Virus record (IMG/VR): IMGVR_UViG_3300034012_003212
Coordinates: 1 to 64,000 of that record
DNA: 64,000 nucleotides
Strand: one strand, 5' to 3'
The notes beneath the pieces are model-generated. The model did not search any database, was not told the DNA's origin, and worked only from the letters and a program-made list of their open reading frames with translations. The translations under genes and the position numbers were made by a program. Shown piece by piece: positions 7,689 through 19,816 of the stretch (position 1 is its first letter; every line of letters begins with the position of its first letter).

Positions 7689-7886
7689 ATGGACTTAGAG
7701 AATGCTAATGTTAAGATTTTTAACTTCTTGCGCACCTCTGTGTGTAACTCCGTGTATGACTCCATATGGGACCCCAGAAGGGACTCCACATGGGACTCCG
7801 TATGGGACTCCTTGAGGAATCCCGTGTTGGACTCCGTTGTTATTAGATTACAGGAACCCATAAGAGAAGAAAGGAAACGAGGATGA
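7689..7886 (+). CDS. SVxx array unit 1 (65 aa)
   Basis: MDLENA head; start reassigned from 7530. Confidence 0.7.
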   Translation: MDLENANVKIFNFLRTSVCNSVYDSIWDPRRDSTWDSVWDSLRNPVLDSVVIRLQEPIREERKRG

Positions 7887-8086
7887 ACTTAAAGAATATT
7901 GATATTAAGATTGGTAGGTCCATGCGGATCTCCGTGGAAAAATCCGCGTGGAACTACGTGTTGGACTCCGTGAGGCACTCCGAGTGGAATTCCGTGTGGT
8001 GGTCCGTGAGTTACTACGTGGAGAATTCCGCGTTGGACTCCGTGAATGATGGACTACAAAGACTCATAAGACAAGAAAGGAAATAA
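7883..8086 (+). CDS. SVxx array unit 2 (67 aa)
   Basis: MNL head, SVxx core, ATGA overlap. Confidence 0.75.
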   Translation: MNLKNIDIKIGRSMRISVEKSAWNYVLDSVRHSEWNSVWWSVSYYVENSALDSVNDGLQRLIRQERK

Positions 8087-8088
8087 GG

Positions 8089-8283
8089 ATGAACTTAGAG
8101 AATGTTAACTATAAGATCTGTGATTCTGCGTATGTATCCTCGTGGAACTCTGTGAGGGGCTCTGTGGTGGTCTCCGTGTGGAACTCTGTGAGTAACTCCG
8201 TGAGTAACTCCGTGAATGATAGACTACAAGAACCCATAAGAGAAGAAAGAGGAAGCGAAGATGAACTTAGAGAATGTTGGTAA
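8089..8283 (+). CDS. SVxx array unit 3 (64 aa, shifted tail)
   Basis: Tail runs 23 nt into unit 4. Confidence 0.7.
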   Translation: MNLENVNYKICDSAYVSSWNSVRGSVVVSVWNSVSNSVSNSVNDRLQEPIREERGSEDELRECW

Positions 8284-8455
8284 AAATATAGAATTCGCAT
8301 CGATCTCCATGGAAAACTTCGCGTTGGGCTCCGTATGGGACTCCTCTATGTACTACTCCATATGTGACTCTGTGAATTTCTTCGTGGAAAACTCAGTGGA
8401 AAACTCAGTGAATTTTAGACTACAGCAACCCATAAGACAAAAAAAACAGGGATGA
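8261..8455 (+). CDS. SVxx array unit 4 (64 aa)
   Basis: Head, core and tail present. Confidence 0.75.
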   Translation: MNLENVGKNIEFASISMENFALGSVWDSSMYYSICDSVNFFVENSVENSVNFRLQQPIRQKKQG

Positions 8456-8646
8456 ACTTAAAGGATGTTGAAGATAAGATTGAGGAGTCTGTGTCATACC
8501 CGTTGCACTCCGTGAGGGACTCCGTGAGGAATTCCATTAGCAACTCCATATGGCCCTCCAATTGGTACTCCGTGTGGAACTCCGTGGGGGGCTCTGTGAA
8601 TATTGGACTAAAAGGATCCATAAGAAAAGAAAGGAAACGAGGATGA
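8452..8646 (+). CDS. SVxx array unit 5 (64 aa)
   Basis: Head, core and tail; ATGA overlap. Confidence 0.75.
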   Translation: MNLKDVEDKIEESVSYPLHSVRDSVRNSISNSIWPSNWYSVWNSVGGSVNIGLKGSIRKERKRG

Positions 8647-8855
8647 ACTTAGAGAATGTTGGTAGGAAGATTTGGGATTACCCTAGGTCAGACTATATGT
8701 TGAACGATGTGTTTGATTGTGTGTATGGATCCGCCTTTACCTTCGCGCGGGACTCCGCGTCCGGTTTCGGGAGGGACTCTGTGTTTGAACCCGCGTGGGA
8801 ATCCGTGTATTATGGAGTGCAAGAACCCATAAGACAAGAATGGGAACAAGAATGA
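8643..8855 (+). CDS. SVxx array unit 6 (70 aa)
   Basis: Internal start of track ORF 8550-8855. Confidence 0.75.
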   Translation: MNLENVGRKIWDYPRSDYMLNDVFDCVYGSAFTFARDSASGFGRDSVFEPAWESVYYGVQEPIRQEWEQE

Positions 8856-9061
8856 ACTTAGAGAATGTTGATAATAAGATTGGTAAGTCCGTGGAGAACT
8901 CCGTTTTGGGCTCCGTGTGGAACTCCGTGTGGAACTCAATGGAGGACTCTGCGGGGAACTCCGTATGGTGCTTTGTGGGGGACTCTGTGGAGGACTCTGT
9001 GCAGAATGGACTACAAGAATCCATAAGAGAAGAGAGAAAACGAAAGAGGAAACGAGGATGA
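8852..9061 (+). CDS. SVxx array unit 7 (69 aa)
   Basis: Identical to unit 21. Confidence 0.75.
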   Translation: MNLENVDNKIGKSVENSVLGSVWNSVWNSMEDSAGNSVWCFVGDSVEDSVQNGLQESIREERKRKRKRG

Positions 9062-9267
9062 ACTTAGAGAATGTTAATTATAAGATCTGTGATTCTGCGT
9101 ATGTATACTCGTGGAGCTCCGTGAGGGACTCTGCGTGGAACTCTGTGATGGACTCCGTGTGGGGGGTGGTGTGGGCATCCGTGGATCATCCCATGAGTAA
9201 CTCCGTGGGGGACTCTGTGGATTTTGGACTACAAAGACCCATACGAGAAGAAAGGAGTCAGGGATGA
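9058..9267 (+). CDS. SVxx array unit 8 (69 aa)
   Basis: 5' part nearly identical to unit 3. Confidence 0.75.
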   Translation: MNLENVNYKICDSAYVYSWSSVRDSAWNSVMDSVWGVVWASVDHPMSNSVGDSVDFGLQRPIREERSQG

Positions 9268-9482
9268 ACTTAGAGAATGTTGGATATATGAGTGTGAATT
9301 ATGTGAGTGACTTGGTGAGTTTATCCATGAGAGACTCCGCGTGGAACTCCGTGTGGGACTTTTTGAGGGACTCCGTGGGGAACTCTGTGAGGGACTCTGT
9401 GGTGGTCTCCGTGTGGAACCCCGTGTGGGACTCCGTGAATATTGGACTACAAGAACCCATAAGAGAAGAAAGGGGCCGGTAA
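9264..9482 (+). CDS. SVxx array unit 9 (72 aa)
   Basis: TAA stop abuts the next ATG. Confidence 0.75.
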   Translation: MNLENVGYMSVNYVSDLVSLSMRDSAWNSVWDFLRDSVGNSVRDSVVVSVWNPVWDSVNIGLQEPIREERGR

Positions 9483-9692
9483 ATGAACTTAGAGAATGTT
9501 AGAGATAAGATTGGGAACTCCGTGAGTATCTCCGTGAATAACTCCGTGTGGTTGTCCGTGTGGAACTCCGTGGATAACACCATGTGGAACTCCGTGAGGA
9601 ACTCCGTGTATTTCTCCATGGGGAACTCCGTGAGAAACTCCGTGAATTTTAGACTACAAAGACCCATACGAGAAGAAAGGAGTCAGGGATGA
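9483..9692 (+). CDS. SVxx array unit 10 (69 aa)
   Basis: Head, core and tail present. Confidence 0.75.
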   Translation: MNLENVRDKIGNSVSISVNNSVWLSVWNSVDNTMWNSVRNSVYFSMGNSVRNSVNFRLQRPIREERSQG

Positions 9693-9874
9693 ACTTAGAG
9701 AATGTTAAAGATAATATTATGAACTCCGTGAGGAACTCCGTGTATTTCTCCGTGGGGAACTCCGTGTGGGACTCCGTGTGGTACTCCGTGTGGCGCTCCA
9801 CGCAGAACTCCGTGAGGAAGTCCGTGGATATTGGACTAACAGAACCCATACTACGAGAAAGGAGACGAAGATGA
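9689..9874 (+). CDS. SVxx array unit 11 (61 aa)
   Basis: ATGA overlap. Confidence 0.75.
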   Translation: MNLENVKDNIMNSVRNSVYFSVGNSVWDSVWYSVWRSTQNSVRKSVDIGLTEPILRERRRR

Positions 9875-10077
9875 ACTTAAAGAGTATTGAGGATGAGATT
9901 CATTCATGGATTGACTCCGTGGAGAGTTCCCTGAAAAACTCCATGTGGAATTACGTGTGTATTTACAGGTCGTATTCCGTGTGCGACCCCGTGTATAGCT
10001 TTGTTGAGAACTCTGTGCGGGATTCTGTTTATATTAGAATACAAAGACCTATAATAGAAGAATTAAAACGAAGATGA
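9871..10077 (+). CDS. SVxx array unit 12 (68 aa)
   Basis: ATGA overlap. Confidence 0.75.
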   Translation: MNLKSIEDEIHSWIDSVESSLKNSMWNYVCIYRSYSVCDPVYSFVENSVRDSVYIRIQRPIIEELKRR

Positions 10078-10250
10078 ACTTAAAGAATGTTGAAAATATG
10101 ATTTGGGAATCCGTGAGGGACTCCTTGTGGTATCCCATGCGGATATCTATATCAAACTCCGTGAAAAAGTCCGTGTGGGTCTCCGCTAGGGAATCTGTTT
10201 ATTATGGAGGAATACAACTACCCATAGCACGAGAAAGGAGACGGGGATGA
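10074..10250 (+). CDS. SVxx array unit 13 (58 aa)
   Basis: Hand translated; below track cutoff. Confidence 0.75.
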   Translation: MNLKNVENMIWESVRDSLWYPMRISISNSVKKSVWVSARESVYYGGIQLPIARERRRG

Positions 10251-10444
10251 ACTTAGAAGATGTTGGTAGGAAGATTGGGGGCTCCATGGATGACTTCGTG
10301 ATGAACTCCGTGTGGTGGTCCGTGGCCAACTCCGTGTGGAACTCCGTGTGGAACTCCGTGTACAACCCCGTGTGGAACTTTGTGAGGAACTCGGTGTATG
10401 ACGGAATAAAACTACCCATAAGAGTAGAGAGGAAACGAAGATGA
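10247..10444 (+). CDS. SVxx array unit 14 (65 aa)
   Basis: ATGA overlap. Confidence 0.75.
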   Translation: MNLEDVGRKIGGSMDDFVMNSVWWSVANSVWNSVWNSVYNPVWNFVRNSVYDGIKLPIRVERKRR

Positions 10445-10650
10445 ACTTAGAGCATGTTGAAAATAAGATTCGGGATTTTGTAAATATCTCAGTGGGGTTT
10501 TCTGTACAGGAATTTGCGTGGAACACCATGACTAAACCCGCGTGGTATTCCATATGGTGCCCCGCGTATAGCTCTGTGGAGAACTCCATGTGGGACTCCG
10601 TGAATATTGGACTACAAAAACCTGTAAGAGAAGAAAGAAAACAAAGATGA
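10441..10650 (+). CDS. SVxx array unit 15 (69 aa)
   Basis: ATGA overlap. Confidence 0.75.
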   Translation: MNLEHVENKIRDFVNISVGFSVQEFAWNTMTKPAWYSIWCPAYSSVENSMWDSVNIGLQKPVREERKQR

Positions 10651-10820
10651 ACTTAGTGCATGTTGGACATAAGATTGTGAAGTCCGTGGAGAACTCCGTG
10701 TGGAACTCCGTGTGGAACTCCGTGTGGAACTCCGTGAGGTTCTCCGTGTGGGACTCCGTTTTGGACTCCGTGAAGACTAGACTACAATTACCCATAAGAG
10801 AAGAAAGGGTACAGGGATGA
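10647..10820 (+). CDS. SVxx array unit 16 (57 aa)
   Basis: ATGA overlap. Confidence 0.75.
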   Translation: MNLVHVGHKIVKSVENSVWNSVWNSVWNSVRFSVWDSVLDSVKTRLQLPIREERVQG

Positions 10821-11011
10821 ACTCAGAGAATGTTAGTGGGAAGATTTGGAAGTTTCGGAGCTCCGTAGATAACTCCGTGTGGAACTTCGTGTGGAACTCT
10901 GTGAGGTTCCCCGGGAGGAACTCGGTGAGGGACTCTGTGAGGAACTCCGTGTGGGACTCTGTAAATATTGGACTAAAAGAACCCATAAGAGAAGAGAGGA
11001 AACAGGGATGA
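10817..11011 (+). CDS. SVxx array unit 17 (64 aa)
   Basis: ATGA overlap. Confidence 0.75.
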   Translation: MNSENVSGKIWKFRSSVDNSVWNFVWNSVRFPGRNSVRDSVRNSVWDSVNIGLKEPIREERKQG

Positions 11012-11193
11012 ACTTAGAGAGGGTTGAAGATAAGATTTGGGGCTACGTAGAGTATTCCGTATGGATATCTGTGGATAAACTTGTGTGGGACTCCGTGTGG
11101 TACTCCGTGTTTGACTCTGTATGGAACTCCGTAAGGGACTCTGTGAATTTTAGACTCCAAGAACCCATAAGAGAAGAGATGAAACAAAGATGA
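11008..11193 (+). CDS. SVxx array unit 18 (61 aa)
   Basis: ATGA overlap. Confidence 0.75.
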   Translation: MNLERVEDKIWGYVEYSVWISVDKLVWDSVWYSVFDSVWNSVRDSVNFRLQEPIREEMKQR

Positions 11194-11387
11194 ACTTAGA
11201 GAATGTTGGAAATAAAATTAGAACAAACGTATGGTATTATGAGTGGGGACATAGTTTCAACTATGCTAATGAATCGTTAGGACGTTCCATATATTTATCT
11301 GTTTATGCCCACATCTTTGATGGCATATTGAACTCTTTATATATTAGACTCCGAGAACCCATAATAGCACAAAAGAAACAGGTATGA
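11190..11387 (+). CDS. SVxx array unit 19 (65 aa, diverged non-repetitive core)
   Basis: Head and tail conserved, core unique. Confidence 0.75.
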   Translation: MNLENVGNKIRTNVWYYEWGHSFNYANESLGRSIYLSVYAHIFDGILNSLYIRLREPIIAQKKQV

Positions 11388-11581
11388 ACTTAGAGAATGC
11401 TAGAGATAAGATTGCGAACTCATTGTGGAAATCCGTGGAGGGTCCTGTGTGTACCTCCACGGGGAAATCCGTGCAGGACGATGGGTGGTTCCCCCTGATG
11501 ACCTCCGTGTGGAACTCCGTGAGGGACTCAGTGGATATTGGACTAACAGAACCCATAAGAAAAGAAAGGAAACAAGGATGA
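11384..11581 (+). CDS. SVxx array unit 20 (65 aa)
   Basis: ATGA overlap. Confidence 0.75.
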   Translation: MNLENARDKIANSLWKSVEGPVCTSTGKSVQDDGWFPLMTSVWNSVRDSVDIGLTEPIRKERKQG

Positions 11582-11787
11582 ACTTAGAGAATGTTGATAA
11601 TAAGATTGGTAAGTCCGTGGAGAACTCCGTTTTGGGCTCCGTGTGGAACTCCGTGTGGAACTCAATGGAGGACTCTGCGGGGAACTCCGTATGGTGCTTT
11701 GTGGGGGACTCTGTGGAGGACTCTGTGCAGAATGGACTACAAGAATCCATAAGAGAAGAGAGAAAACGAAAGAGGAAACGAGGATGA
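11578..11787 (+). CDS. SVxx array unit 21 (69 aa)
   Basis: Identical to unit 7. Confidence 0.75.
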   Translation: MNLENVDNKIGKSVENSVLGSVWNSVWNSMEDSAGNSVWCFVGDSVEDSVQNGLQESIREERKRKRKRG

Positions 11788-11981
11788 ACTTAGAGAATGT
11801 TAATTATAAGATTGGGAACTCGGTGAGGGACTCTGTGAACAACTCCTTGTGGAACTCCGTGTGGGACTCTGTGTTTAACCCTGTGAGGTACTCTGTATGG
11901 GATTCTGTGAATGACTCCATGGGGAGCTCTGTGAATATTGGACTAAAAGGATCCATAAGAAAAGAAAGGAAACAAGGATGA
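11784..11981 (+). CDS. SVxx array unit 22 (65 aa)
   Basis: Tail shared with unit 5. Confidence 0.75.
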   Translation: MNLENVNYKIGNSVRDSVNNSLWNSVWDSVFNPVRYSVWDSVNDSMGSSVNIGLKGSIRKERKQG

Positions 11982-12175
11982 ACTTAGAGCCGATTGATAA
12001 CAAGATTTGGATCTCCATACGGGACTCCGTGGATAACACCGTGCGGAACTCCGTGAATAAATCCGCGTGGAACCACGTAAGTTTCTTCGTGTGGAACTCC
12101 GTTTTGGACTCCGTGTGGATCTCTGTGAATATTGGACTACAAAACCCCATAAGAGAAGAGAGGAAACAGGGATGA
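11978..12175 (+). CDS. SVxx array unit 23 (65 aa)
   Basis: ATGA overlap. Confidence 0.75.
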   Translation: MNLEPIDNKIWISIRDSVDNTVRNSVNKSAWNHVSFFVWNSVLDSVWISVNIGLQNPIREERKQG

Positions 12176-12378
12176 ACTTAGAGAGTATTGAGGATGAGAT
12201 TCATTCATGGATTGACTCCGTTTCGGGCTCCATGTGGAAACCTGTGTGGGATTATATGTTGTACTCCGCGAGGGGCTCCGTGTGGGCCTCCGTGATGGAC
12301 TCCGCTGGGGACTATGTGGAGGACTCTGTGCAGAATGGACTACAAGAACACATAAGAGAAGAAAGGGCCGGTAAATGA
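12172..12378 (+). CDS. SVxx array unit 24 (68 aa)
   Basis: Head shared with unit 12. Confidence 0.75.
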   Translation: MNLESIEDEIHSWIDSVSGSMWKPVWDYMLYSARGSVWASVMDSAGDYVEDSVQNGLQEHIREERAGK

Positions 12379-12581
12379 ACTTAGAGAATGTTGATAAACC
12401 ATATTTTCACATTGTAGATAACACCCTATGGAATCGTGTGTACTCAGTATGGAAATCGTCATTAACAGTTTCCTCACATAATTTCGTGCGTGATTCTGTA
12501 GATATATCCATGAGATCTGTACAACTCTCGTTGCACGAGGGCGTATTAAGACCCGTAAGAGAAGAAAGAAAACAAGGATGA
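12375..12581 (+). CDS. SVxx array unit 25 (68 aa, diverged core)
   Basis: Head and tail conserved. Confidence 0.75.
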   Translation: MNLENVDKPYFHIVDNTLWNRVYSVWKSSLTVSSHNFVRDSVDISMRSVQLSLHEGVLRPVREERKQG

Positions 12582-12739
12582 ACTTAGAGGATGTTGGATA
12601 TAAGATCGGTGATTCTGTGTGTGTATCCGTGTGGTATTCTGTGAGTGACTATGCGTGGAACTCTGTGCAGGACTCCATAAAGGACCTTGCGTATAATGGG
12701 CTAAAAGAACCCATAAGAGAAGATAACAAACAAAGATGA
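12578..12739 (+). CDS. SVxx array unit 26 (53 aa)
   Basis: Hand translated. Confidence 0.75.
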   Translation: MNLEDVGYKIGDSVCVSVWYSVSDYAWNSVQDSIKDLAYNGLKEPIREDNKQR

Positions 12740-12909
12740 ACTTAGAGAATGTTGGAACTAAGGTTTGGGGCTCCGTGTGGAACTCCATGAGGTTCTTCGA
12801 GAGGGACTCCATGTGGGACTCCGTGAGGGACTCTATGTATAACTCCGTGTGGGACTCCGTGTTCGATGGGTTACAACTACCAATAAGAAAAGAGGGGAAA
12901 CAAGGATGA
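12736..12909 (+). CDS. SVxx array unit 27 (57 aa)
   Basis: Hand translated; head shared with unit 31. Confidence 0.75.
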   Translation: MNLENVGTKVWGSVWNSMRFFERDSMWDSVRDSMYNSVWDSVFDGLQLPIRKEGKQG

Positions 12910-13103
12910 ACTTAGAGAATGTTAAAGATAGGATTTGGTACTCCGTGGGGAACTCCGTGAGTGACCCCATGCGGAAATCCGTGTGGGACTTTTTGAGGGA
13001 CTCCGTGAAGTATCCTGTGTATAACTCCGTGGTGGTCTCCGTGTGGGACTCCGTGGATATTGGACTACAAGAACCCATAAGAGAAGAAAGGGCACAGGGA
13101 TGA
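12906..13103 (+). CDS. SVxx array unit 28 (65 aa)
   Basis: ATGA overlap. Confidence 0.75.
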   Translation: MNLENVKDRIWYSVGNSVSDPMRKSVWDFLRDSVKYPVYNSVVVSVWDSVDIGLQEPIREERAQG

Positions 13104-13270
13104 ACTTAGAATCGGTTGGTGTGAAGATAAGAGACACCGTGTGGAACTCCGTGTGGCCCTCCAATTGGTACTCCGTGTGGAACTCCGTGTTTGACCCCGT
13201 GAGGAACTCCGTGTGGGACTCCTTGAATATTGGACTACAAGAACCCATAAGAGAAGAAAGGGGCCGGTAA
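13100..13270 (+). CDS. SVxx array unit 29 (56 aa)
   Basis: Core shared with unit 33. Confidence 0.75.
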   Translation: MNLESVGVKIRDTVWNSVWPSNWYSVWNSVFDPVRNSVWDSLNIGLQEPIREERGR

Positions 13271-13528
13271 ATGAACTTAGAGAATGTTGGACATAAGATT
13301 TGGGGCTCCGTGTGGAACTCCATGAGGAAATTCGTGGGTATCTCCGTGAGGGTCTCTGCGTGGAAATCTGTGAGGTACTCCATGGGTATCTCCGTGGGAG
13401 ACTCTGTGTGGGACTCCGTGAAGGGCTCCGTGGGGGTCTCCGTGTTGAACTCTGTGTATGGAATACAAGACGCAATAAGAGAAGAAAGATTCAACAATGA
13501 GGCGGCACAAAAAAATATTTTTTTTTGA
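13271..13528 (+). CDS. SVxx array unit 30 (85 aa, tail broken by inserted module)
   Basis: Junction motif is cut after GAAGAAAG (13488); the frame runs on into promoter DNA. Confidence 0.7.
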   Translation: MNLENVGHKIWGSVWNSMRKFVGISVRVSAWKSVRYSMGISVGDSVWDSVKGSVGVSVLNSVYGIQDAIREERFNNEAAQKNIFF

Positions 13529-13551
13529 AAGTAGGATTGTGTATGTTTGCA
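13509..13551 (+). promoter_or_regulatory. Bacteroidota-type promoter P1 upstream of DUF6745-like gene
   Basis: A7-TA-T9-G, then TATGTTTG at 13542-13549. Confidence 0.7.
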
Positions 13552-13613
13552 TAGATATTTTTTCCAGGGAATATGAACCTGATTTGACATCAAGATTTTT
13601 TTAGTTTTCCAAT

Positions 13614-13653: not shown

Positions 13654-13699
13654 GAGGGTATAACCTCACAGTTTTTACAACTTTTTAAGGATAGCCATT

Positions 13700-14692
13700 A
13701 TGGCAAAAAAATATTCACCAAGCAATCCGCTTGAGAAACTCACTCCTGAAATGGAGGCGCTCATCCCAGTCGTCAGGGATGAATGGATTAACCGAGCATA
13801 CAAAGGGTTGAATCCAAATGATATTGACGAGAAGAAGGTGAAGAGTGCTGTACATTGGATATACAAAAAATCGGACTTGCCCAAGCCGATGGTCATCATA
13901 ACGGATTCGCCAAAAGCTGCTCAAGATGCAGCAAATGAATTGTATAAGAAGCATGTTGACCCATCAGCAAAGCGTCAGTATTTTCCATTTTCTGACAGTC
14001 TTTCTGTATCCGACTTCCGCTGGGTTGCATTCTATGATTACTTCACCCGCATTGGCGTCTTGCAAGACAAGACATTCAATAAATACATGGAGTACACAAA
14101 ACTTGGCATTTATGACACAATCAAACTTCACGATGTTTGTATTGTTGTGAAAATGCCTGAGTATGTTAAATCCACTATTGTGCGTGATGTTCGCGTCCCG
14201 CACAGTGAGGATTCTCCTGCTGTTAAGTTCATTGATGGTGATTCTTATTATTTCTGGAATGGTACATTGGTTCCGGAGAAATGGATCATGCGCAAAGACG
14301 AGATCACACAGAATGATATCATCTCAGAAGACAATGCCGAAAAGCGTCGTTGTCTCATGGAAATCCTTGGAGCAAAGAGGTATTATGACATCATCTCTGA
14401 TGGAAAGGGTCTTAAACTCATTGACGAGGACACAGACAATCAGGGATTCCCTATGAGATTGTATGAGACAACAAAGAATGATTCTATCGTCAACAAAAAG
14501 GTTCAATTCCTTGAAGTGACTGATCCATCAACAGGGCGAGTGTATAACATCTACCCTCCTAATCAGAATGCAAAGAATGTATGGGATGCGAAGGCACAGA
14601 CATTCAGTTCTGAGAAATTGTACGTCCGTCAGGGTGATGTTGGACTGACGAAGATAGGATACGATGAAGCGCATCCTGTGCAAGAAACATAA
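13700..14692 (+). CDS. DUF6745-like protein (330 aa)
   Basis: KLTPE.EALIP..RDEWI, DSP, W.AFYDYF, YFWNG..VPE.WI, I..E.NAEKRRCLME.LG, V.DPSTGR.Y...P and C-terminal RQGDV motifs. Confidence 0.7.
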   Translation: MAKKYSPSNPLEKLTPEMEALIPVVRDEWINRAYKGLNPNDIDEKKVKSAVHWIYKKSDLPKPMVIITDSPKAAQDAANELYKKHVDPSAKRQYFPFSDSLSVSDFRWVAFYDYFTRIGVLQDKTFNKYMEYTKLGIYDTIKLHDVCIVVKMPEYVKSTIVRDVRVPHSEDSPAVKFIDGDSYYFWNGTLVPEKWIMRKDEITQNDIISEDNAEKRRCLMEILGAKRYYDIISDGKGLKLIDEDTDNQGFPMRLYETTKNDSIVNKKVQFLEVTDPSTGRVYNIYPPNQNAKNVWDAKAQTFSSEKLYVRQGDVGLTKIGYDEAHPVQET

Positions 14693-14709
14693 TGTAATTT
14701 TTATAGTAT

Positions 14710-14718
14710 AATATATAC
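14710..14718 (+). promoter_or_regulatory. Candidate late-promoter motif (AATATATAC)
   Basis: ATATATA motif upstream of 14752; AGGAG at 14742-14746. Confidence 0.4.
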
Positions 14719-14751
14719 ACCTAATTAACTTTTTTTTCAATAGGAGATTTT

Positions 14752-15048
14752 ATGGATAAGTCAGAAAGAATCCGCAGAGTGATTGCTCGTGGTGAGCATT
14801 CCAACCATTCACATGTTGTGTGTGGTGATGATGTAACAATTCGTGAAGAGAAGGGCACAATTTTTGTCACAGTTGGCAATAGTGGTGCAGTTCTTCGTCA
14901 CTTGCTTGAGATGGAGTACATCGAAACAGGCAAGGAAGTATGGACAAAGGAACATGAAGATGTGCCGCTTCCTCAGGGTGAATATAAATTTGTTCCCCAG
15001 ATTGAGTACAATCCGCTCGATGAAACCATCCAAAGAACAAAGGACTAA
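14752..15048 (+). CDS. Small His-motif beta protein, usual DUF6745 partner
   Basis: ARGE.SNHSH...LRH...EHEDVPLPQGEYK..PQIEYNP......KD resembles the GE.tGHaH/HeEH..i.lp.G.Y...Q.EY partner family (recalled). Confidence 0.7.
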   Translation: MDKSERIRRVIARGEHSNHSHVVCGDDVTIREEKGTIFVTVGNSGAVLRHLLEMEYIETGKEVWTKEHEDVPLPQGEYKFVPQIEYNPLDETIQRTKD

Positions 15049-15075
15049 TCATATTAGTTCAAAAGATTGGTACAT

Positions 15076-15109
15076 AAAAATGGCACGCCTTAAACGTGCC
15101 ATTTTTTTT
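15076..15109 (+). terminator. Intrinsic terminator (possibly bidirectional)
   Basis: A5-TGGCACG-CCTTAAA-CGTGCCA-T8. Confidence 0.85.
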
Positions 15110-15125
15110 AACAGAGGAAACAAAG

Positions 15126-15323
15126 ATGAACTTAGAGAATGTTGGAACTAAGGTTTGGGACTCCATGTGGAACTCCATGAGGTTCTTCGAGAGGGACTCC
15201 ATGTGGGACTCCGTGTGGAACTCCGTGTGGGGTTCCGTAAGGGTCTCCGTGTGGGACTCTGTGTGGGATTCTGTTTATATTAGAATACAAAGACCTATAA
15301 TAGAAGAATTAAAACGAAGATGA
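15126..15323 (+). CDS. SVxx array unit 31 (65 aa)
   Basis: Preceded by the 3' half of a junction motif. Confidence 0.75.
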   Translation: MNLENVGTKVWDSMWNSMRFFERDSMWDSVWNSVWGSVRVSVWDSVWDSVYIRIQRPIIEELKRR

Positions 15324-15505
15324 ACTTAGAGAATGTTGGATATGAGATTTGGAAATCCGTGAGTTCCTCCGTGAGGAACTCTGTGGATGACTCCGCGTGG
15401 AACTCCGTGTGGGGTTCCGTGAGGGTCTCCGTGTGGGACTCTGTGCGGGATTCTGTTTATATTAGAATACAAAGACCTATAATAGAAGAATTAAAACGAA
15501 GATGA
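15320..15505 (+). CDS. SVxx array unit 32 (61 aa)
   Basis: Tail shared with units 12 and 31. Confidence 0.75.
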   Translation: MNLENVGYEIWKSVSSSVRNSVDDSAWNSVWGSVRVSVWDSVRDSVYIRIQRPIIEELKRR

Positions 15506-15723
15506 ACTTAGAGATTGTTGAAGATAAGATTTGGAGCTCCGTGGAGTATTCCGTGTGGATCTCTATGGATAAAATCGTGTGGAACTCCGTGTGGCCCTCC
15601 AATTGGTACTCCGTGTGGAACTCCGTGTTTGACCCCGTGAGGAACTCTGTGATGGACCCTGTGAGGGACTCTGTTTATGGTGGATTACAAATACCCATAA
15701 GACAAGAAAGGGAACGAGGATGA
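15502..15723 (+). CDS. SVxx array unit 33 (73 aa)
   Basis: ATGA overlap. Confidence 0.75.
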   Translation: MNLEIVEDKIWSSVEYSVWISMDKIVWNSVWPSNWYSVWNSVFDPVRNSVMDPVRDSVYGGLQIPIRQERERG

Positions 15724-15905
15724 ACTTAGAGAATGTTAAAGATAAGATTTGGAACTCCGTGAGGAACTCCGTGTATTTCTCCATGAAGAACTCCATGAGG
15801 AAATCTGCATGGAACTCCGTGATGGGCTCTGTGTGGGCCTTTGTGTGGGACTCTGTTTATGGTGGACTACAAGAACCCATAAGAGAAGAAAGGAGACAAG
15901 GATGA
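15720..15905 (+). CDS. SVxx array unit 34 (61 aa)
   Basis: ATGA overlap. Confidence 0.75.
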   Translation: MNLENVKDKIWNSVRNSVYFSMKNSMRKSAWNSVMGSVWAFVWDSVYGGLQEPIREERRQG

Positions 15906-16108
15906 ACTTAGAGCAGGTTGAATATAAGATTGGTAACTCCTTGTATGACTCCAAGTGGAACTCTGTGAGGTTCTCCGTGAGGAACTCCGTGTGGAAGTCC
16001 CTGTTGAGCGTGTGGGACTCCGTGTGGAAATCCGTGTTGGTCTCCGTGAGGGACTCTGTGCAGAATGGACTAAAAAACCCCATAAGAGAAGAATGGGGGC
16101 AAGAATGA
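15902..16108 (+). CDS. SVxx array unit 35 (68 aa)
   Basis: ATGA overlap. Confidence 0.75.
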   Translation: MNLEQVEYKIGNSLYDSKWNSVRFSVRNSVWKSLLSVWDSVWKSVLVSVRDSVQNGLKNPIREEWGQE

Positions 16109-16302
16109 ACTTAGATCTGGTTGGTGGGAAGATTTGGGATTCCATGTTGAACTCCGTGTGGGAATCCGTGTGGAACTCCGTGTTTGACTCCGTGAGGGAC
16201 TCTGTGGGGGGCTCCGTGAAGTATTCCGCATGGAACTCCGTGTGGGACTCTGTGAAAGTTGGACTACAAGAACCCATAAGAGAAGAAAGGAAACGAGGAT
16301 GA
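16105..16302 (+). CDS. SVxx array unit 36 (65 aa)
   Basis: ATGA overlap. Confidence 0.75.
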   Translation: MNLDLVGGKIWDSMLNSVWESVWNSVFDSVRDSVGGSVKYSAWNSVWDSVKVGLQEPIREERKRG

Positions 16303-16484
16303 ACTTAGAGCATGTTGAATATAAGATTGGTAACTCCGTGTATGACTCCATGTGGAACTCTGTGTGGGGTTCCGTGAGGGTCTCCGTGTGGGACTCCGTG
16401 GTGGTTTCCGTGGCGTATTTTGTGGGGGACTCCGTGAATATTAGACTACAGATACCCATAAGACAAGAAAGGGAACAGGAATGA
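16299..16484 (+). CDS. SVxx array unit 37 (61 aa)
   Basis: ATGA overlap. Confidence 0.75.
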   Translation: MNLEHVEYKIGNSVYDSMWNSVWGSVRVSVWDSVVVSVAYFVGDSVNIRLQIPIRQEREQE

Positions 16485-16735
16485 ACTTAGAGCCGGTTGA
16501 ATATAAGATTGGTAACGCCGTGTATGACTCCAAGTGGAACTCTGTGAGGTTCTCCGTGTGGAACTCCGTGTGGAAGTCCCTGTTGAGCGTGTGGGACTCC
16601 GTGTGGAAATCCGTGTTGGTCTCCGTGAGGGACTCTGTGGGGGGCTCCGTGAAGTATTCCGCATGGAACTCCGTGAGGGATTCTGTGTATTTTGGACTAA
16701 CAGAACCCATAAGACAAGAAAGGAAACGGGGATGA
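16481..16735 (+). CDS. SVxx array unit 38 (84 aa, chimera of units 35 and 36)
   Basis: 5' core matches unit 35 and 3' core matches unit 36. Confidence 0.75.
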   Translation: MNLEPVEYKIGNAVYDSKWNSVRFSVWNSVWKSLLSVWDSVWKSVLVSVRDSVGGSVKYSAWNSVRDSVYFGLTEPIRQERKRG

Positions 16736-16851
16736 ACTTAGAGCATGTTGGTAGAAAGATTTGGGAATCCTTGAAGAACTTTGCGTGGGATTTTGTGGGC
16801 ATTGGACACAAAAACACCCATAAGACGAGAAAGAGAAAAATGGGGACGAGG
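16732..16851 (+). pseudogene. SVxx array unit 39, shortened and frameshifted, fused in frame to unit 40
   Basis: GGACACAAAAACACCCAT has one extra nt versus canonical GGACTACAAGAACCCAT; no stop before 17025. Confidence 0.65.
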
Positions 16852-17025
16852 ATGAACTTAGAGAATGTTGGTAGGAAGATTGATATCCGCATGTGGTTCT
16901 CCGTGAGGATATCCGCGGAGAACCACACATTAAACTCCGTGGATATCTTCGTGTATTTCCCCGTGAGGGACTCTGTGTATGATGGAATACAACTACCCAT
17001 AAGAGAAGAAAAGAAACAAGGATGA
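16852..17025 (+). CDS. SVxx array unit 40 (57 aa)
   Basis: Own ATG at 16852. Confidence 0.7.
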   Translation: MNLENVGRKIDIRMWFSVRISAENHTLNSVDIFVYFPVRDSVYDGIQLPIREEKKQG

Positions 17026-17177
17026 ACTTAGAGAATGTTGGATATAAGATTTGGGATTTCGCGCCCATCCGATTGGAACAACCCACATGGTACTCTGTGA
17101 TGGAACCTGTGAATATTAGACTAATACAATCCATAAGTAACGAAAGGGAACACGAAGATGAACTTAGAGAGTGTTAG
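17022..17177 (+). CDS. SVxx array unit 41 (51 aa, shifted tail)
   Basis: Hand translated; overlaps unit 42 by 20 nt. Confidence 0.65.
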   Translation: MNLENVGYKIWDFAPIRLEQPTWYSVMEPVNIRLIQSISNEREHEDELREC

Positions 17178-17355
17178 TTGGAAGATTTCAAGATGTGTAC
17201 ATTCTTATGTGTATATTCCTGCTGAAAGTTTCATATTGAACTCCGTGAATGTCTCACGTTGGATTTCTATATGGGATTTTACTATGGATCCGTTATTACA
17301 ATCGGTTAACAACAGGATACAAACGCATATAAGACAAGAAAGGGGACGGGGATGA
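17158..17355 (+). CDS. SVxx array unit 42 (65 aa, diverged core)
   Basis: Head and tail conserved. Confidence 0.75.
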   Translation: MNLESVSWKISRCVHSYVYIPAESFILNSVNVSRWISIWDFTMDPLLQSVNNRIQTHIRQERGRG

Positions 17356-17486
17356 ACTTAGAGAATGTTAAAGATAAGATTTGGAACTCCGTGAGGAACT
17401 CCGTGGAGATTTCCGTGTGGGACTCTGTGGGAAAATCTGTGGATGGACTACACGGATCCATAATAAAAGAAAGGGAACAGGGATGA
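17352..17486 (+). CDS. SVxx array unit 43 (44 aa)
   Basis: Hand translated. Confidence 0.7.
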   Translation: MNLENVKDKIWNSVRNSVEISVWDSVGKSVDGLHGSIIKEREQG

Positions 17487-17689
17487 ACTTAAATGCTTTT
17501 ACTACAAATAATATAAAGGTGAGTAACTTCATGTGGAACTCCGTAGCGGACTCCGTGTGGAACTCCGTGTTGAACTCCGTGGAGATTTCCGTGTGGGGCT
17601 CCGTGTATAACTCCGTGAGGGACCCTGTGTGGAACTCTGTTTATGATGGACTTCAAGAACCCATAAGAGAAGAAAGGAAAAAAAGATGA
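17483..17689 (+). CDS. SVxx array unit 44 (68 aa)
   Basis: ATGA overlap. Confidence 0.75.
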   Translation: MNLNAFTTNNIKVSNFMWNSVADSVWNSVLNSVEISVWGSVYNSVRDPVWNSVYDGLQEPIREERKKR

Positions 17690-17883
17690 ACTTAGAGAAT
17701 GTTGAAGATAAGATTTGGGAATCCGTAGGGAACTCCGTGTGGGACTCCGTGGTGGTCTCCGTGAGGGAGTCCGTGGTGGTCTCCGTGAGGGGCTCTGTGG
17801 CGTATTCTATGGGGTACTTTGTGGCGAACTCCATGGATATTGGACTGCAAGAACCCATAAGAGAACAAAGGGAAAGAAGATGA
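17686..17883 (+). CDS. SVxx array unit 45 (65 aa)
   Basis: ATGA overlap. Confidence 0.75.
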   Translation: MNLENVEDKIWESVGNSVWDSVVVSVRESVVVSVRGSVAYSMGYFVANSMDIGLQEPIREQRERR

Positions 17884-18065
17884 ACTTGGCGTATGTTGGT
17901 ATTGAGATTGGGGACTACGTGATGGTCTCCGCGCTGGAGTCCGTGAGGATTTTCGTGCCAGACTCTGTAAGTGAGTCTGTGGATGACTTCGTGTGGGTCT
18001 CCTTGAGGGCCTCCGTGAATTTTAGACTACAAAGACCCATACGAGAAGAAAGGAGTCAGGGATGA
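17880..18065 (+). CDS. SVxx array unit 46 (61 aa)
   Basis: ATGA overlap. Confidence 0.75.
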   Translation: MNLAYVGIEIGDYVMVSALESVRIFVPDSVSESVDDFVWVSLRASVNFRLQRPIREERSQG

Positions 18066-18296
18066 ACTTAGAGAATGTTAGTGTTAAGATTTGGAACTCC
18101 GTGTGGTGGTCCGTGGGAAACTCCGTGTGGGTCTCCATGCGGGACTTTTTGAGGAGGGATTCCGTGGGGAACTCTGTGAGGGACTCCGTGGTGGTCTCCG
18201 TGAGGGACTCCGTGGATCTCCGTGAGGAACTCTGTATATAACTCAGTGGATTTTAGACTACAAGAACCCATAAGACAAGAAAGGAGACAGGGATGA
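18062..18296 (+). pseudogene. SVxx array unit 47, frameshifted
   Basis: Frameshift near GTGGATCTCCGT (~18215) gives TAA at 18239-18241; the tail motif is intact in another frame. Confidence 0.7.
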
Positions 18297-18487
18297 ACTT
18301 AGAGAATGTTAAAGATAAAATTTGGAACTCCGTGAGGAACTCCGTGTATATCTCCATGGAGAACTCCGTGTGGTACTCCATGAGGAAATCTGCATGGAAC
18401 TCCGTGAGGAACTCTGTGTGGGACTTTGTGTGGGACTCTGTGGATGGACTACAAGAACCCATAAGACAAGAAAGGAGACAGGGATGA
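18293..18487 (+). CDS. SVxx array unit 48 (64 aa)
   Basis: Close to unit 34. Confidence 0.75.
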   Translation: MNLENVKDKIWNSVRNSVYISMENSVWYSMRKSAWNSVRNSVWDFVWDSVDGLQEPIRQERRQG

Positions 18488-18621
18488 ACTTAGAGAATGT
18501 TAGAGATAGGATTTGGTACTCCGTGAGGAACTCCGTGATGGGCTCTGCGAGGATCTCTGTGAGGGATTCTGTGTATTTTGGACTAACAGAACCCATAAGA
18601 CAAGAAAGGAGACAGGGATGA
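18484..18621 (+). CDS. SVxx array unit 49 (45 aa)
   Basis: ATGA overlap. Confidence 0.75.
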   Translation: MNLENVRDRIWYSVRNSVMGSARISVRDSVYFGLTEPIRQERRQG

Positions 18622-18791
18622 ACTTAGAGAATGTTAGAGATAGGATTTGGTACTCCGTGAGGAACTCCGTGTATTTCTCCATGGAGAACTCCGCGGGGTA
18701 CTCCGTGGATAAATCCGTGAGGGACCCTGTGAGGGACTCTGTGGATTTTGGACTAGCAGCACCCATAAGACAAGAAAGGAGACAGGGATGA
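18618..18791 (+). CDS. SVxx array unit 50 (57 aa)
   Basis: Head identical to unit 49. Confidence 0.75.
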   Translation: MNLENVRDRIWYSVRNSVYFSMENSAGYSVDKSVRDPVRDSVDFGLAAPIRQERRQG

Positions 18792-18979
18792 ACTTAGAGA
18801 ATGTTAGAGATAAAATTTGGAACTCCGTGGATACCCCCGTGTGGCACTCCGTTTTGGACTCTGTGAATAACTCCTTTTTCTTGAGGGAATCCGTGTGGAA
18901 CTCTGCGAGGAACTCCGTGTGGAAGTCTGTGAATACTGGACTACAGTACCTAATAAGACGAGAAAGGGAACAGGAATGA
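18788..18979 (+). CDS. SVxx array unit 51 (63 aa)
   Basis: ATGA overlap. Confidence 0.75.
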   Translation: MNLENVRDKIWNSVDTPVWHSVLDSVNNSFFLRESVWNSARNSVWKSVNTGLQYLIRREREQE

Positions 18980-19158
18980 ACTTAGAGAATGTTAGAGATA
19001 TGATTTGGTACATAGGAGACGATGTTTTCTCGAGATTTGTTAAAATCCTCTGGTACCCGCCAGCAGAATCAGGGTATCAAAACATATTGACTCCTATGTG
19101 TGACTGCTTATACAATAGACTACAGACATCTATAAGACACCAAAGATGGCTCGGATGA
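18976..19158 (+). CDS. SVxx array unit 52 (60 aa, diverged core)
   Basis: Head conserved, core unique. Confidence 0.7.
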   Translation: MNLENVRDMIWYIGDDVFSRFVKILWYPPAESGYQNILTPMCDCLYNRLQTSIRHQRWLG

Positions 19159-19280
19159 ACTTAGATAATATTTGGAAATCCATGAGGCGTTCCGTGGATA
19201 AATCCATGAATAACTCCGCGTGGAACTCCGTGAATTTTAGACTGCAAAACCCCGTAAGACGAGAAAGAAGACATGGATGA
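19155..19280 (+). CDS. SVxx array unit 53 (41 aa)
   Basis: Hand translated; shortest intact unit. Confidence 0.7.
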   Translation: MNLDNIWKSMRRSVDKSMNNSAWNSVNFRLQNPVRRERRHG

Positions 19281-19474
19281 ATTTAACTGATGTTGATGGT
19301 ATAACCCAACATTTCATATGGCGTCTTATTACACGGCCCGCATGGGATTCTATTGTGAATTTTACAGGTGGATCCATGAGATCAGTTGATCACCCGGTGA
19401 AGGAATCGGTATGTAAAAGTCTACAAATGAAAATAAGATTCAACGTGCCGGTGGTAAAAATTCTATCGGATTAA
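19277..19474 (+). CDS. SVxx array unit 54 (65 aa, highly diverged)
   Basis: MNLTDV head with ATGA overlap. Confidence 0.6.
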   Translation: MNLTDVDGITQHFIWRLITRPAWDSIVNFTGGSMRSVDHPVKESVCKSLQMKIRFNVPVVKILSD

Positions 19475-19538
19475 TTCAATGGCGCCGTGTTAGATAATTT
19501 ATTGATATGATTTGTTTGTTAAAAAAAAGGAAATAGTC

Positions 19539-19760
19539 ATGAATTTACAAAACGCTGATTGTTTAAATGGATCAGTATTAGAATCCATTCTAAAATCTTG
19601 TTTTAGTTCCATCGAGAAACCTTTAGTGGAAATCACTTTGAGTTCAGTCGACCCCAAGATGTTAGAATATATTTGGGAAAACACGAGAGGAATGTTGTGG
19701 AACTCTGTTCTTTTAAGATTACAAAATCCAATAAGGGACGATTTCGCTACCAAAATTTAG
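19539..19760 (+). CDS. SVxx array unit 55 (73 aa, highly diverged terminal copy)
   Basis: MNLQNA head and WNSVLLRLQNPIR tail. Confidence 0.6.
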   Translation: MNLQNADCLNGSVLESILKSCFSSIEKPLVEITLSSVDPKMLEYIWENTRGMLWNSVLLRLQNPIRDDFATKI

Positions 19761-19816
19761 AACAATAGCCGCAGAGGGCTTTGTTGAATACCGTCATTTT
19801 TAGCAATCGTTGCGAT

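What the first reader, a model, noticed from the sequence alone, without database searches (positions are those of the whole stretch)
7689..19760. 55-member array of coupled mini-genes with fixed head and tail and a hypervariable 4-residue-repeat core
Seen: 30 + 25 tandem ORFs (intact units 41-85 aa) share the head MNLENV..KI and the tail GLQEPIREER..G around a core of S-V-x-x modules. Only one pair of units is identical. The array takes about 10.5 kb of an otherwise compact phage genome. Inference: it is a maintained library of variant peptides, for example interchangeable binding subunits, decoys or anti-defence effectors against a variable host target. I do not recognise this organisation from any described system. 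No recombinase, RT or cas gene is in the window.
Basis: partly seen in the sequence, partly recalled or inferred. Interest (0 to 1): 0.95.

Follow-up and report, generated by a model that had tools for sequence, protein, structure and literature searches.

The report
Phage array of 55 variable mini-genes
A 260-kb phage carries 55 back-to-back mini-genes for different single-helix proteins of about 65 residues. Their variable 4-residue-repeat core is the same repeat that relatives carry inside one neighbouring protein (DUF6745), so this looks like a protein part that was split off, amplified and rapidly diversified, with function still unknown.

Summary
There are 30 + 25 tandem + strand ORFs at 7689-13528 and 15126-19760. 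They share the head MNLENV..KI, a core of x-x-S-V modules and the tail GLQEPIREER. 47 of the 55 end in an ATGA stop/start overlap.

- **Not an assembly artefact.** An independent 135-kb assembly is 100% identical over window 11672-24692.
- **What the core is.** It is the same period-4 repeat ([W/R/G][D/N/A]SV) that hundreds of proteins carry internally, mainly Pfam DUF6745.
- **Context.** The two sub-arrays flank a DUF6745 gene that lacks this repeat (13700-14692), plus a conserved 98-aa His-rich partner gene (14752-15048).
- **Relatives.** Related phages with a repeatless DUF6745 have 1, at least 2, at least 10 or 55 stand-alone mini-genes beside the pair. Three relatives with an internal repeat have none.
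- **Turnover.** In strains whose DUF6745 and partner genes are nearly identical, units are replaced, deleted or resized.
- **Selection.** Between lineages all synonymous sites of the module have flipped while the peptide pattern is kept.

Best reading: a translated, translationally coupled gene family evolving by duplication and loss. It derives from the DUF6745 repeat arm, now supplied in trans and amplified. The biochemical role is inferred only. I found no described equivalent.

The parts
7689..13528 (+). Sub-array 1: 30 mini-genes (53-85 aa) with head MNLENV..KI, core of x-x-S-V modules and tail GLQEPIREER..G. They are joined by ATGA overlaps.
   Evidence: The part 11672-13528 is reproduced 100% in the independent assembly L008.
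8852..9086 (+). First copy of the only long exact repeat (235 bp). The second copy is at 11578-11812. It contains the one identical unit pair.
13700..14692 (+). DUF6745 protein of 330 aa that lacks the internal tetrapeptide repeat many family members carry.
   Evidence: Pfam PF20530, 42.9 bits against a cut-off of 27. 88 homologues. No repeat by the period-4 scan. AF2 pLDDT 93. No PDB fold match. The best viral match is the DUF6745 protein of Microcystis phage LMM01.
14752..15048 (+). 98-aa His-rich partner protein. Invariant residues are ARGE.SNH.H, then H, then E.WT.EH.D.
   Evidence: Adjacent to DUF6745 in 7 of 7 loci at 48-73% identity. More than 713 homologues, none named and none with a Pfam domain. 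No Pfam, PHROG or PDB hit.
15126..19760 (+). Sub-array 2: 25 mini-genes (41-97 aa) of the same design. The last two units (19277, 19539) are degenerate.
   Evidence: The whole block is 100% identical in L008. Near-identical stretches with module indels occur in L001 and L002.
16732..17025 (+). Frameshifted unit fused to the next one, giving a 97-aa ORF. It is an example of unit decay.
   Evidence: The same fusion is present in L001 and L002.
18062..18241 (+). Unit with a broken tail. The relative L001 has an intact 78-aa version.

Best explanation
**What it is.** The array is a real, translated multigene family. Each unit encodes a protein of about 65 residues predicted to be one long alpha-helix. 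A conserved Ser-Val seam recurs every four residues. Two free positions per module are mostly W/R/G followed by N/D.

**Origin.** This core is the same repeat that most members of the DUF6745 family carry as an internal arm between their N- and C-terminal parts. In this phage clade the DUF6745 gene has no arm. The arm is instead encoded as a separate mini-gene next to DUF6745 and its 98-aa partner: one copy in one relative, and expanded to 55 copies here.

**Expression (inferred).** The units are co-oriented with DUF6745 and its partner. They are chained by stop/start overlaps, with a purine-rich Shine-Dalgarno-like run embedded in each tail. This predicts polycistronic expression with translational coupling.

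**How the family changes (shown by comparison).**
- Slippage of whole 12-nt modules.
- Unequal crossing-over, which gains or loses units.
- Gene conversion between units, which produces mosaics.

**Function (inferred).** The helices act together with the DUF6745/partner pair as trans-supplied, interchangeable variable arms. The phage would then make many surface variants at once, most plausibly in a conflict with its host.
For: **Coding**
- 47 of 55 junctions are ATGA overlaps.
- 21 units have lengths that require in-frame indels which are not whole modules. About 5 units are frame-broken.
- The head M-N-L-[D/E]-N-[V/I]-G is kept between the window and the L005/L003 lineage through synonymous changes.
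- The module is NGG-NAC-TCC-GTG here and NGG-NAT-TCT-GTT there. All three synonymous third positions have flipped while [W/R/G][D/N]SV is kept.

**Concerted evolution**
- Module codons are far from the genome's own usage: TCC 67% against 13%, GTG 86% against 24%, AAC far above AAT against 40%.

**Link to DUF6745**
- The unit profile finds 1370 proteins. The top hits are 370-570 aa with 100-280 aa of period-4 repeat, and 8 of 10 tested are PF20530.
- P0084 and P0099 carry exactly x-x-S-V repeats internally.

**Synteny**
- Stand-alone mini-genes sit beside a repeatless DUF6745 plus partner in several relatives: the window (55), L005 (at least 10), L012 (at least 2, with a different head and tail but the same core and ATGA overlap) and L130 (exactly 1).
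- The P0005 contig has at least 9 flanking small genes, but no DNA was available to check them.
- L006, L013 and L014, whose DUF6745 has a 27-37 aa internal repeat, have none.

**Turnover**
- L009, L010 and L011 differ from the window in DUF6745 and partner by 0-2 synonymous changes. Their flanking units are nonetheless deleted, resized or only 73-84% identical to any window unit.

**Structure and RNA**
- AF2 predicts a helix over residues 3-64 at pLDDT 77.
- The junction RNA is unstructured, and no Rfam family matches.
Against: - There is no expression or protein data.
- pN/pS is about 1 among paralogues and about 0.8 among near-orthologous units. Short-term evolution therefore looks nearly neutral, and positive selection is not shown.
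- About five units are decaying.
- L004 has a repeatless DUF6745 with no mini-gene in the 14.5 kb held. The cis/trans complementarity is therefore not strict, and the counted loci are few and phylogenetically related.
- The function of DUF6745 is unknown: no PDB fold match, and no PADLOC or NCBIfam hit.
- An interaction between mini-protein and DUF6745 was not tested. The AF2 model of the repeatless protein is well ordered at the insertion point, so it does not obviously need an arm.
- A period of 4.0 residues does not give a straight amphipathic face on an ideal alpha-helix. The helix model may be incomplete.
Confidence: 0.55

Rival explanations
1. Selfish or neutral expansion. A gene fragment with a slippage-prone 12-nt repeat has ballooned by unequal crossing-over, like a coding minisatellite. 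The units would have no function of their own.
For: - pN/pS is about 0.8-1.
- Differences between near-orthologous units are spread 46:29:36 over the three codon positions.
- Copy number differs between strains.
- Several units are broken.
- Codon usage is unlike the rest of the genome.
Against: - In-frame indels are in excess and 47 ATGA junctions are preserved.
- Mini-genes persist beside DUF6745 in lineages whose DUF6745 pS is about 0.84.
- The peptide pattern and the head are kept through complete synonymous turnover.
- 10.5 kb is a real packaging cost for a phage.
Confidence: 0.15
2. Silent-cassette library. The units would be donors that recombine into an expressed gene carrying the same repeat, as in antigenic variation (Borrelia vls, Neisseria pilS, Treponema tprK).
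For: - Many variant cassettes lie next to a family member.
- Units are mosaics of one another.
- Unit order differs between strains.
Against: - Every unit has its own ATG, a Shine-Dalgarno-like run and a coupled stop.
- The adjacent DUF6745 has no repeat to receive cassettes. It is unchanged in strains whose arrays differ.
- No other ORF in the 64 kb matches the unit profile.
- No recombinase was found.
- The remaining 196 kb of the genome was not examined.
Confidence: 0.08
3. DNA-level element. The roughly 400 copies of the 12-nt module would be protein-binding iterons, for example for DUF6745 acting like the lambda O initiator, whose origin lies inside its own gene. The ORFs would be incidental.
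For: - DUF6745 lies beside replication genes in some phages: SSB and primase in L006, DnaB in L013, Toprim in L004.
- The internal repeat sits between two protein parts, as the lambda origin does in O (from memory).
- Module third positions are homogenised.
Against: - The DNA motif is not conserved between lineages (TCCGTG against TCTGTT), while the peptide is.
- Other family members use x-x-Q-V, x-x-N-V or S-E-L-x repeats with a similar two-variable-position, hydrophobic-fourth-residue layout.
- The head, stop and overlap architecture has no explanation at DNA level.
- No fold or sequence match to DNA-binding proteins was found.
Confidence: 0.05
4. Arrayed precursor peptides of a ribosomally made, modified peptide (RiPP). 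They would have a fixed leader and follower and a hypervariable core, and be matured by DUF6745 and the His-rich partner.
For: - The design is a fixed head, variable core and fixed tail.
- Many precursors next to two conserved proteins of unknown function resemble prochlorosin-type precursor families (from memory).
- The partner has invariant His, Glu and Asp residues that suggest metal binding.
Against: - The same repeat is normally an internal segment of DUF6745 itself, which does not fit a precursor.
- The head is only about 10 residues.
- Head and tail differ completely in L012 while the core persists.
- Cys is rare.
- No known RiPP enzyme family was detected.
Confidence: 0.05
5. Targeted hypermutation by a diversity-generating retroelement, or an assembly artefact.
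For: - Variation concentrates in codon positions 1-2 of the NGG and NAC codons.
- AAC is the classic DGR codon (from memory).
- Repeats are hard to assemble.
Against: - No RT is present in the window.
- Units differ in length, so no single template could serve them.
- The commonest variable first base is T, not A.
- Bacterial and viral proteins show the same W/R/G pattern widely.
- The artefact reading is refuted for 11672-19760 by the identical independent assembly and by several other contigs.
Confidence: 0.03

Closest known systems
Internal tetrapeptide-repeat arm of DUF6745 (PF20530) proteins, for example in Microcystis phage Ma-LMM01 and many bacterial and viral homologues
   Same: The period-4 repeat is of the same kind: a hydrophobic fourth residue, a small or polar third residue, mostly W/R/G at the first position and D/N/A at the second. 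Lengths are variable. The unit profile scores these proteins best.
   Different: There the repeat is one internal segment of a 350-570 aa protein. Here it is 55 free-standing ORFs, each with its own start, head, tail and coupled stop, beside a DUF6745 that lacks the segment. The family itself has no known function.
Gene-amplification 'accordions' and multigene families that evolve by duplication and loss in viruses (for example poxvirus K3L amplification; from memory)
   Same: Tandem amplification next to the parent locus, copy-number differences between close strains, divergence and decay of copies.
   Different: The array is retained across deep lineages and its units are translationally coupled mini-genes. 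No selective agent is known.
Silent-cassette antigenic variation loci (Borrelia vls, Neisseria pilS, Treponema tprK donors; from memory)
   Same: Dozens of variant segments with conserved flanks, clustered at one locus, and mosaic by gene conversion.
   Different: The units are complete ORFs with starts and ribosome-binding runs. No expression site was found in the window.
T4-type internal proteins with a shared N-terminal capsid-targeting sequence (from memory)
   Same: Small polymorphic phage proteins with a fixed head of about 10 residues and a variable body, some of which are anti-defence effectors.
   Different: There is no sequence similarity. The head differs between lineages (MNLENV, MNLDNIG, M[K/R]YI, MKLNNVG). 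No evidence of packaging or cleavage was obtained.
Repeat-variable-diresidue proteins (TALE, PPR, PUF; from memory)
   Same: The logic is the same: an invariant scaffold with two hypervariable residues per module. Here there are 94 distinct di-residues.
   Different: The module is 4 residues rather than 34-36. No ligand is known. This is an analogy only.

Membership tests
Pfam DUF6745 (PF20530), for the gene at 13700-14692 | Match to the family model above the gathering score | tested here: met
   42.9 bits against a cut-off of 27, E = 4.4e-11. Nearly all homologues listed carry PF20530.
DUF6745-type tetrapeptide repeat, for the unit core | Period-4 repeat with a conserved small-plus-hydrophobic pair and two variable positions dominated by W/R/G and D/N/A | tested here: met
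   296 x-x-S-V modules. 125 of 173 fetched long proteins carry at least 20 aa of a period-4 repeat, most of this type. Profile hits reach E = 7e-44.
DUF6745-type tetrapeptide repeat, for the unit core | The repeat lies inside a DUF6745 (or other larger) protein, between the N- and C-terminal parts | tested here: not met
   The units are free-standing ORFs of 41-97 aa. In 51 IMG/VR loci with the repeat, it lies in a single ORF of about 50-560 aa (stop-to-stop; the short ones sit at locus ends), and none holds an array.
Diversity-generating retroelement target | Reverse transcriptase nearby | tested here: not met
   No RT among ORFs of 150 aa or more in the 64 kb. The remaining 196 kb of the contig was not examined.
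Diversity-generating retroelement target | Template/variable repeat pair with adenine-specific substitutions | tested here: not met
   Units differ in length (41-97 aa). At the most variable site the bases are T 152, A 76, G 58 and C 12. Mosaic and indel differences dominate between strains.
CRISPR array | Near-identical short direct repeats separated by unique spacers, with cas genes | tested here: not met
   The units are ORFs. The conserved junction varies. No cas gene and no Rfam match.
Silent-cassette antigenic variation | Promoterless, start-less cassettes plus an expression site with the same variable region | tested here: not met
   Each unit has an ATG and a purine-rich run upstream. 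There is no other profile hit in the window. The rest of the genome was not examined.
RiPP precursor array | Recognisable maturation enzyme and a leader peptide recognised by it | tested here: inconclusive
   No known RiPP enzyme family in Pfam or NCBIfam for the neighbours. DUF6745 and the partner have unknown function. The head is not conserved in L012.
Anti-phage defence or counter-defence families in PADLOC | Match to a defence-system model | tested here: not met
   No hit for the unit, DUF6745 or the partner.

The most novel reading that the evidence does not exclude
The 4-residue module may be the shortest known repeat with a variable di-residue. In this reading each helix is a programmable reader of a repeating polymer (single-stranded nucleic acid, glycan or teichoic acid), one module per monomer. 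DUF6745 and its partner would be the effector onto which arms are mounted. The phage would then express a library of 55 specificities at once, and the thousands of bacterial and viral proteins with these arms would share one recognition code. The evidence does not exclude this: there are two free positions per module, 94 distinct di-residues, a module rise of about 6 A on a helix, and residues typical of sugar or base contacts. Nothing tested here supports it directly.
Probability: 0.08. Interest if true: 0.95.

Novelty: new variant of a known kind. Interest (0 to 1): 0.74.

Why it matters
**A handle on an uncharacterised repeat.** The period-4 W/R/G-D/N repeat arm is widespread. The unit profile finds 1370 representative proteins, and the repeat occurs in DUF6745 proteins, in a second unrelated family, in many phages and in giant-virus bins. 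No paper in the searched library mentions it.

**A natural experiment.** Here the arm has been cut out, given its own start and stop, and multiplied 55-fold beside the rest of the protein and a tightly linked partner. That makes the arm's role testable on its own.

**An unusual genome organisation.** About 4% of a jumbo-phage genome is spent on chained mini-genes that turn over between strains whose neighbouring genes are nearly identical. This may be the longest run of translationally coupled ORFs seen in a phage.

**If the arms are binding surfaces.** This would be a new way for a virus to field many specificities at once without a mutagenic retroelement.

Tried and rejected
- **Family and structure searches on the units.** Pfam, PHROGs, NCBIfam, PADLOC and PDB sequence searches gave nothing meaningful.
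- **Phage genome collection.** Megablast of the region against INPHARED phages found no match. tblastn of DUF6745 found one weak hit.
- **Fold search of the DUF6745 model.** No PDB match, best E = 0.19. BFVD returned only other DUF6745 proteins.
- **Related loci.** The search for related loci with the unit or DUF6745 alignments failed for lack of conserved stretches. Two scans of GTDB genomes found no cellular relative of this phage clade's DUF6745, so the host stays unknown.
- **Regulatory signals.** Promoter and terminator scans were at shuffle level. Shine-Dalgarno use by other genes is weak, 10 of 28.
- **RNA.** No Rfam family and no junction RNA structure.
- **Other strands and frames.** Long ORFs on the minus strand and in other + frames (for example 12922-13593 and 16446-17000) are by-products of a 12-nt repeat that has no stop in any frame.
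- **Frameshift fusion.** A -1 frameshift into a polyprotein was considered. There is no slippery site, and the L005 lineage uses a 14-nt overlap instead.
- **L018.** This 261-kb contig turned out to be an unrelated high-GC virus.
- **Literature.** Searches found nothing on the motif, DUF6745 or comparable arrays.

Full report
**1.

On the + strand there are 55 small ORFs. Thirty lie in 7689-13528 and 25 in 15126-19760.

- **Design.** They share the head MNLENV..KI and the tail GLQEPIREER..G. The core is built of four-residue x-x-S-V modules (alignment A1).
- **Junctions.** 47 of the 55 end in TGA overlapping the next ATG as ATGA. Each unit is therefore read one frame back from the one before.
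- **Size and diversity.** Lengths are 41-85 aa, plus a 97-aa fusion. Only one pair is identical (8852 and 11578). Median pairwise identity is 42%.
- **Specificity.** A profile of the units hits 54 stop-to-stop ORFs in the 64-kb window. All lie in the array on the + strand.
- **Spurious ORFs.** Long ORFs in other frames and on the minus strand arise because the 12-nt repeat has no stop in any frame.

**2. It is not an assembly artefact**

The window is the first 64 kb of a 260,658-bp contig (JGI 3300034012, also IMG/VR UViG_3300034012_003212).

- A 135-kb contig from a different assembly (ENA ERZ27272050, locus L008) is 100.000% identical over 13,021 bp. This equals window 11672-24692. It covers the last ten units of sub-array 1 and all of sub-array 2.
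- Other samples give short contigs made only of such units (L001, L002, L003).
- Inside the array the longest exact repeat is 235 bp and the next is 84 bp. Short reads can therefore resolve it.
- The order of 7689-11671 rests on this one assembly.

**3. Genome context**

PHROG and Pfam hits include baseplate wedge, tail fibres, helicase, primase, SSB and a nuclease. Together with the contig length they indicate a jumbo tailed phage.

No RT, recombinase or cas gene is present among ORFs of 150 aa or more. The host is unknown. Shine-Dalgarno use is weak, and no GTDB genome encodes a close relative of the phage's DUF6745.

**4. The key is the gene that interrupts the array**

- **DUF6745.** ORF 13700-14692 (330 aa) is a DUF6745 protein.
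- **Its relatives.** It has 88 homologues. The longer ones carry an internal period-4 repeat. The repeat sits between the conserved 'SP..AQ..AN' stretch and the 'Y..FS.Y....W.SFYDFF' stretch. It is x-x-Q-V, x-x-N-V or S-E-L-x, and in many cases exactly x-x-S-V.
- **Repeatless clade.** The window protein and all relatives at 55% identity or more lack this repeat.
- **Reverse search.** The unit profile, searched against 1.84 billion representatives, finds 1370 proteins. The best are 370-570 aa with 100-280 aa of such repeat. Eight of the ten tested are DUF6745.
- **Same residue preferences everywhere.** The first free position is mostly W/R/G and the second mostly D/A/N.
- **Second family.** A group of about 260-aa proteins starting MC.FFSC carries the same repeat.
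- **Conclusion.** The unit core is a widespread but uncharacterised protein module. It has no Pfam model and no paper in the searched library.

**5. A conserved three-part neighbourhood**

ORF 14752-15048 (98 aa) has invariant His, Glu and Asp residues.

- It lies next to DUF6745 in 7 of 7 loci examined, at 48-73% identity.
- It belongs to an unnamed family of more than 713 proteins.

Stand-alone mini-genes with an x-x-S-V core lie beside this pair in five cases:

| Locus | DUF6745 identity to window | Mini-genes | Notes |
|---|---|---|---|
| Window | - | 55 | |
| P0005 contig | 78% | at least 9 flanking small genes | No DNA available to check them |
| L005 | 61% | at least 10, on both sides | Head MNLDNIG, tail R.QYES[R/K/N], 14-nt overlap |
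| L012 | 60% | at least 2 before the contig ends | Head M[K/R]YI, tail QL.D.., ATGA overlap |
| L130 | 56% | exactly 1 | Head MKLNNVG |

All five have a repeatless DUF6745.

- L006, L013 and L014 have DUF6745 proteins with a 27-37 aa internal repeat and no mini-gene.
- L004 has neither repeat nor mini-gene.
- The simplest history is that the arm became a separate gene in this clade and was then amplified to different degrees. The sample is small and related, so this is suggestive and not proven.
- In 51 other IMG/VR loci with 12-nt periodic TCCGTG repeats and a profile hit, the repeat lies in a single ORF. None has an array.

**6. Evidence that the units are proteins under selection**

- **Indels.** Unit lengths fall in all four classes modulo 4 (34, 15, 4 and 2 units). 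At least 21 units have therefore had in-frame indels that are not whole modules. Only about five units are frame-broken.
- **Synonymous turnover.** Between the window lineage and the L005/L003 lineage, DUF6745 pS is 0.84, which is saturated. The module has changed from NGG-NAC-TCC-GTG to NGG-NAT-TCT-GTT. Every synonymous third position has flipped while the peptide is kept.
- **Head.** It is kept through AAC/AAT, TTA/CTA and AAT/AAC changes.
- **Homogenisation within a lineage.** The synonymous sites are homogenised and unlike the genome's own codon usage. This indicates concerted evolution.
- **Why paralogue pN/pS is about 1.** The same homogenisation explains the value of about 1 in head and tail.
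- **Tails.** They embed a purine run upstream of the next ATG (GAAAGGAAA here, TAAGGAG in L005). Part of the 'fixed tail' is therefore probably a ribosome-binding signal.
- **RNA.** Junction RNA is unstructured.

**7. Dynamics**

Strains L009, L010 and L011 differ from the window in DUF6745 and partner by 0-2 synonymous substitutions. Their arrays differ far more.

- L009 goes from unit 8643 straight into a hybrid of the 8852-type and 12172 units. About 16 units are missing relative to the window.
- Several units match no window unit better than 73-84%.
- Others differ by exactly 5 modules. For example the window unit at 17352 has 44 aa and the L001 version 64 aa.
- The broken unit 18062 is intact in L001.
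- Replaced units are mosaics of other units.
- For near-orthologous units, pN/pS is about 0.8.

The array therefore evolves by module slippage, unequal crossing-over and gene conversion, with gain and loss of units. This is far faster than its neighbours evolve. Positive selection is not demonstrated.

**8. Structure**

- **Mini-protein.** AF2 with the 48-unit alignment gives one continuous helix over residues 3-64, pLDDT 77.
- **Faces of the helix.** Ser and Val form the conserved seam, and the two free positions form the opposite face.
- **A caveat on the helix.** The hydrophobic moment peaks at 90 degrees, not 100. On an ideal helix the seam winds, which suggests supercoiled packing against a partner.
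- **DUF6745.** It models at pLDDT 93. It has no PDB fold match and no PDB sequence match. Its function is unknown.

**9. Interpretation**

*Shown:*
- The units form a real, rapidly rearranging array of coding mini-genes.
- Their core is the DUF6745-type repeat arm.
- The array is physically linked to a repeatless DUF6745 and its partner across lineages.

*Inferred:*
- Polycistronic, coupled translation.
- Origin by gene fission followed by amplification.
- Action in trans with DUF6745 and the partner as interchangeable variable arms, probably in phage-host conflict.

Rivals are set out in the Rival explanations section: neutral expansion, silent cassettes, DNA iterons, RiPP precursors, and DGR or artefact. 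None is fully excluded, because 196 kb of the genome and all expression data are missing.

**10. Novelty**

The repeat module and DUF6745 are catalogued but uncharacterised. I found no description of mini-gene arrays of this kind. I rate it a new variant of a known kind: a tandemly amplified viral multigene family that evolves by duplication and loss. The organisation is unusual, and it offers a clear route to the function of a large unknown family.

Noticed in passing
window 14752-15048; alignment A4: The 98-aa partner of DUF6745 belongs to a large unnamed family (more than 713 proteins, no Pfam model). Its invariant motifs are ARGE.SNH.H, H50 and E.WT.EH.D, which look like a small metal-binding site. 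From memory the layout is cupin-like, but this was not tested.
   Followed up: partly
proteins P0207, P0231, P0164, P0178, P0206: A second, unrelated family of about 260 aa starts MC.FFSC and ends ..LVPSFDGK.WRLH. It carries the same x-x-S-V repeat internally. The repeat is therefore a module shared between families.
   Followed up: no
IMG/VR loci L019-L128: 114 viral stretches contain 12-nt periodic TCCGTG repeats. They include several giant-virus bins (GVMAG contigs L046, L059, L060, L069, L081, L090). The same codons for Ser-Val recur across very different viruses.
   Followed up: partly
window 19842-20990: A 382-aa protein directly after the array has a phosphoribosyltransferase domain. 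It shows weak similarity to the PADLOC models PRTase_III-A and ShosT.
   Followed up: no
window 21042-21560: The 172-aa ORF carries a precomputed Pfam hit to cpYpsA (PF12694) in the gene table of locus L007.
   Followed up: no
window 1-1474: A collagen-like Gly-X-Y tail-fibre gene contains 9-, 27- and 81-nt tandem repeats. It is cut by the contig start.
   Followed up: no
window 26332-26866 (minus-strand ORF 26221-27183): Tandem repeats of 63 nt, about 3 copies in each of three overlapping arrays, lie inside a 320-aa ORF of unknown function.
   Followed up: no
window 28427-29116 (minus strand) and 3054-3710: The first ORF has a bifunctional nuclease domain plus a UVR motif. The second is an NAGPA-type phosphodiester glycosidase.
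   Followed up: no
window 22678-22750: A single tRNA-Lys (anticodon TTT).
   Followed up: no
window 8000-20000: GC skew in the array is 0.18-0.27, against about 0.03-0.12 in neighbouring + strand genes. The cause is the G-rich module (TGG, GTG). This could mislead skew-based origin prediction.
   Followed up: no
PADLOC model PDLC03396 (REase_II) against P0099: A model for a type II nicking endonuclease matches the x-x-S-V repeat region of a DUF6745 protein at E = 1.5e-7. Some seed sequences of that model probably contain the same repeat, which is a likely source of false annotation.
   Followed up: no
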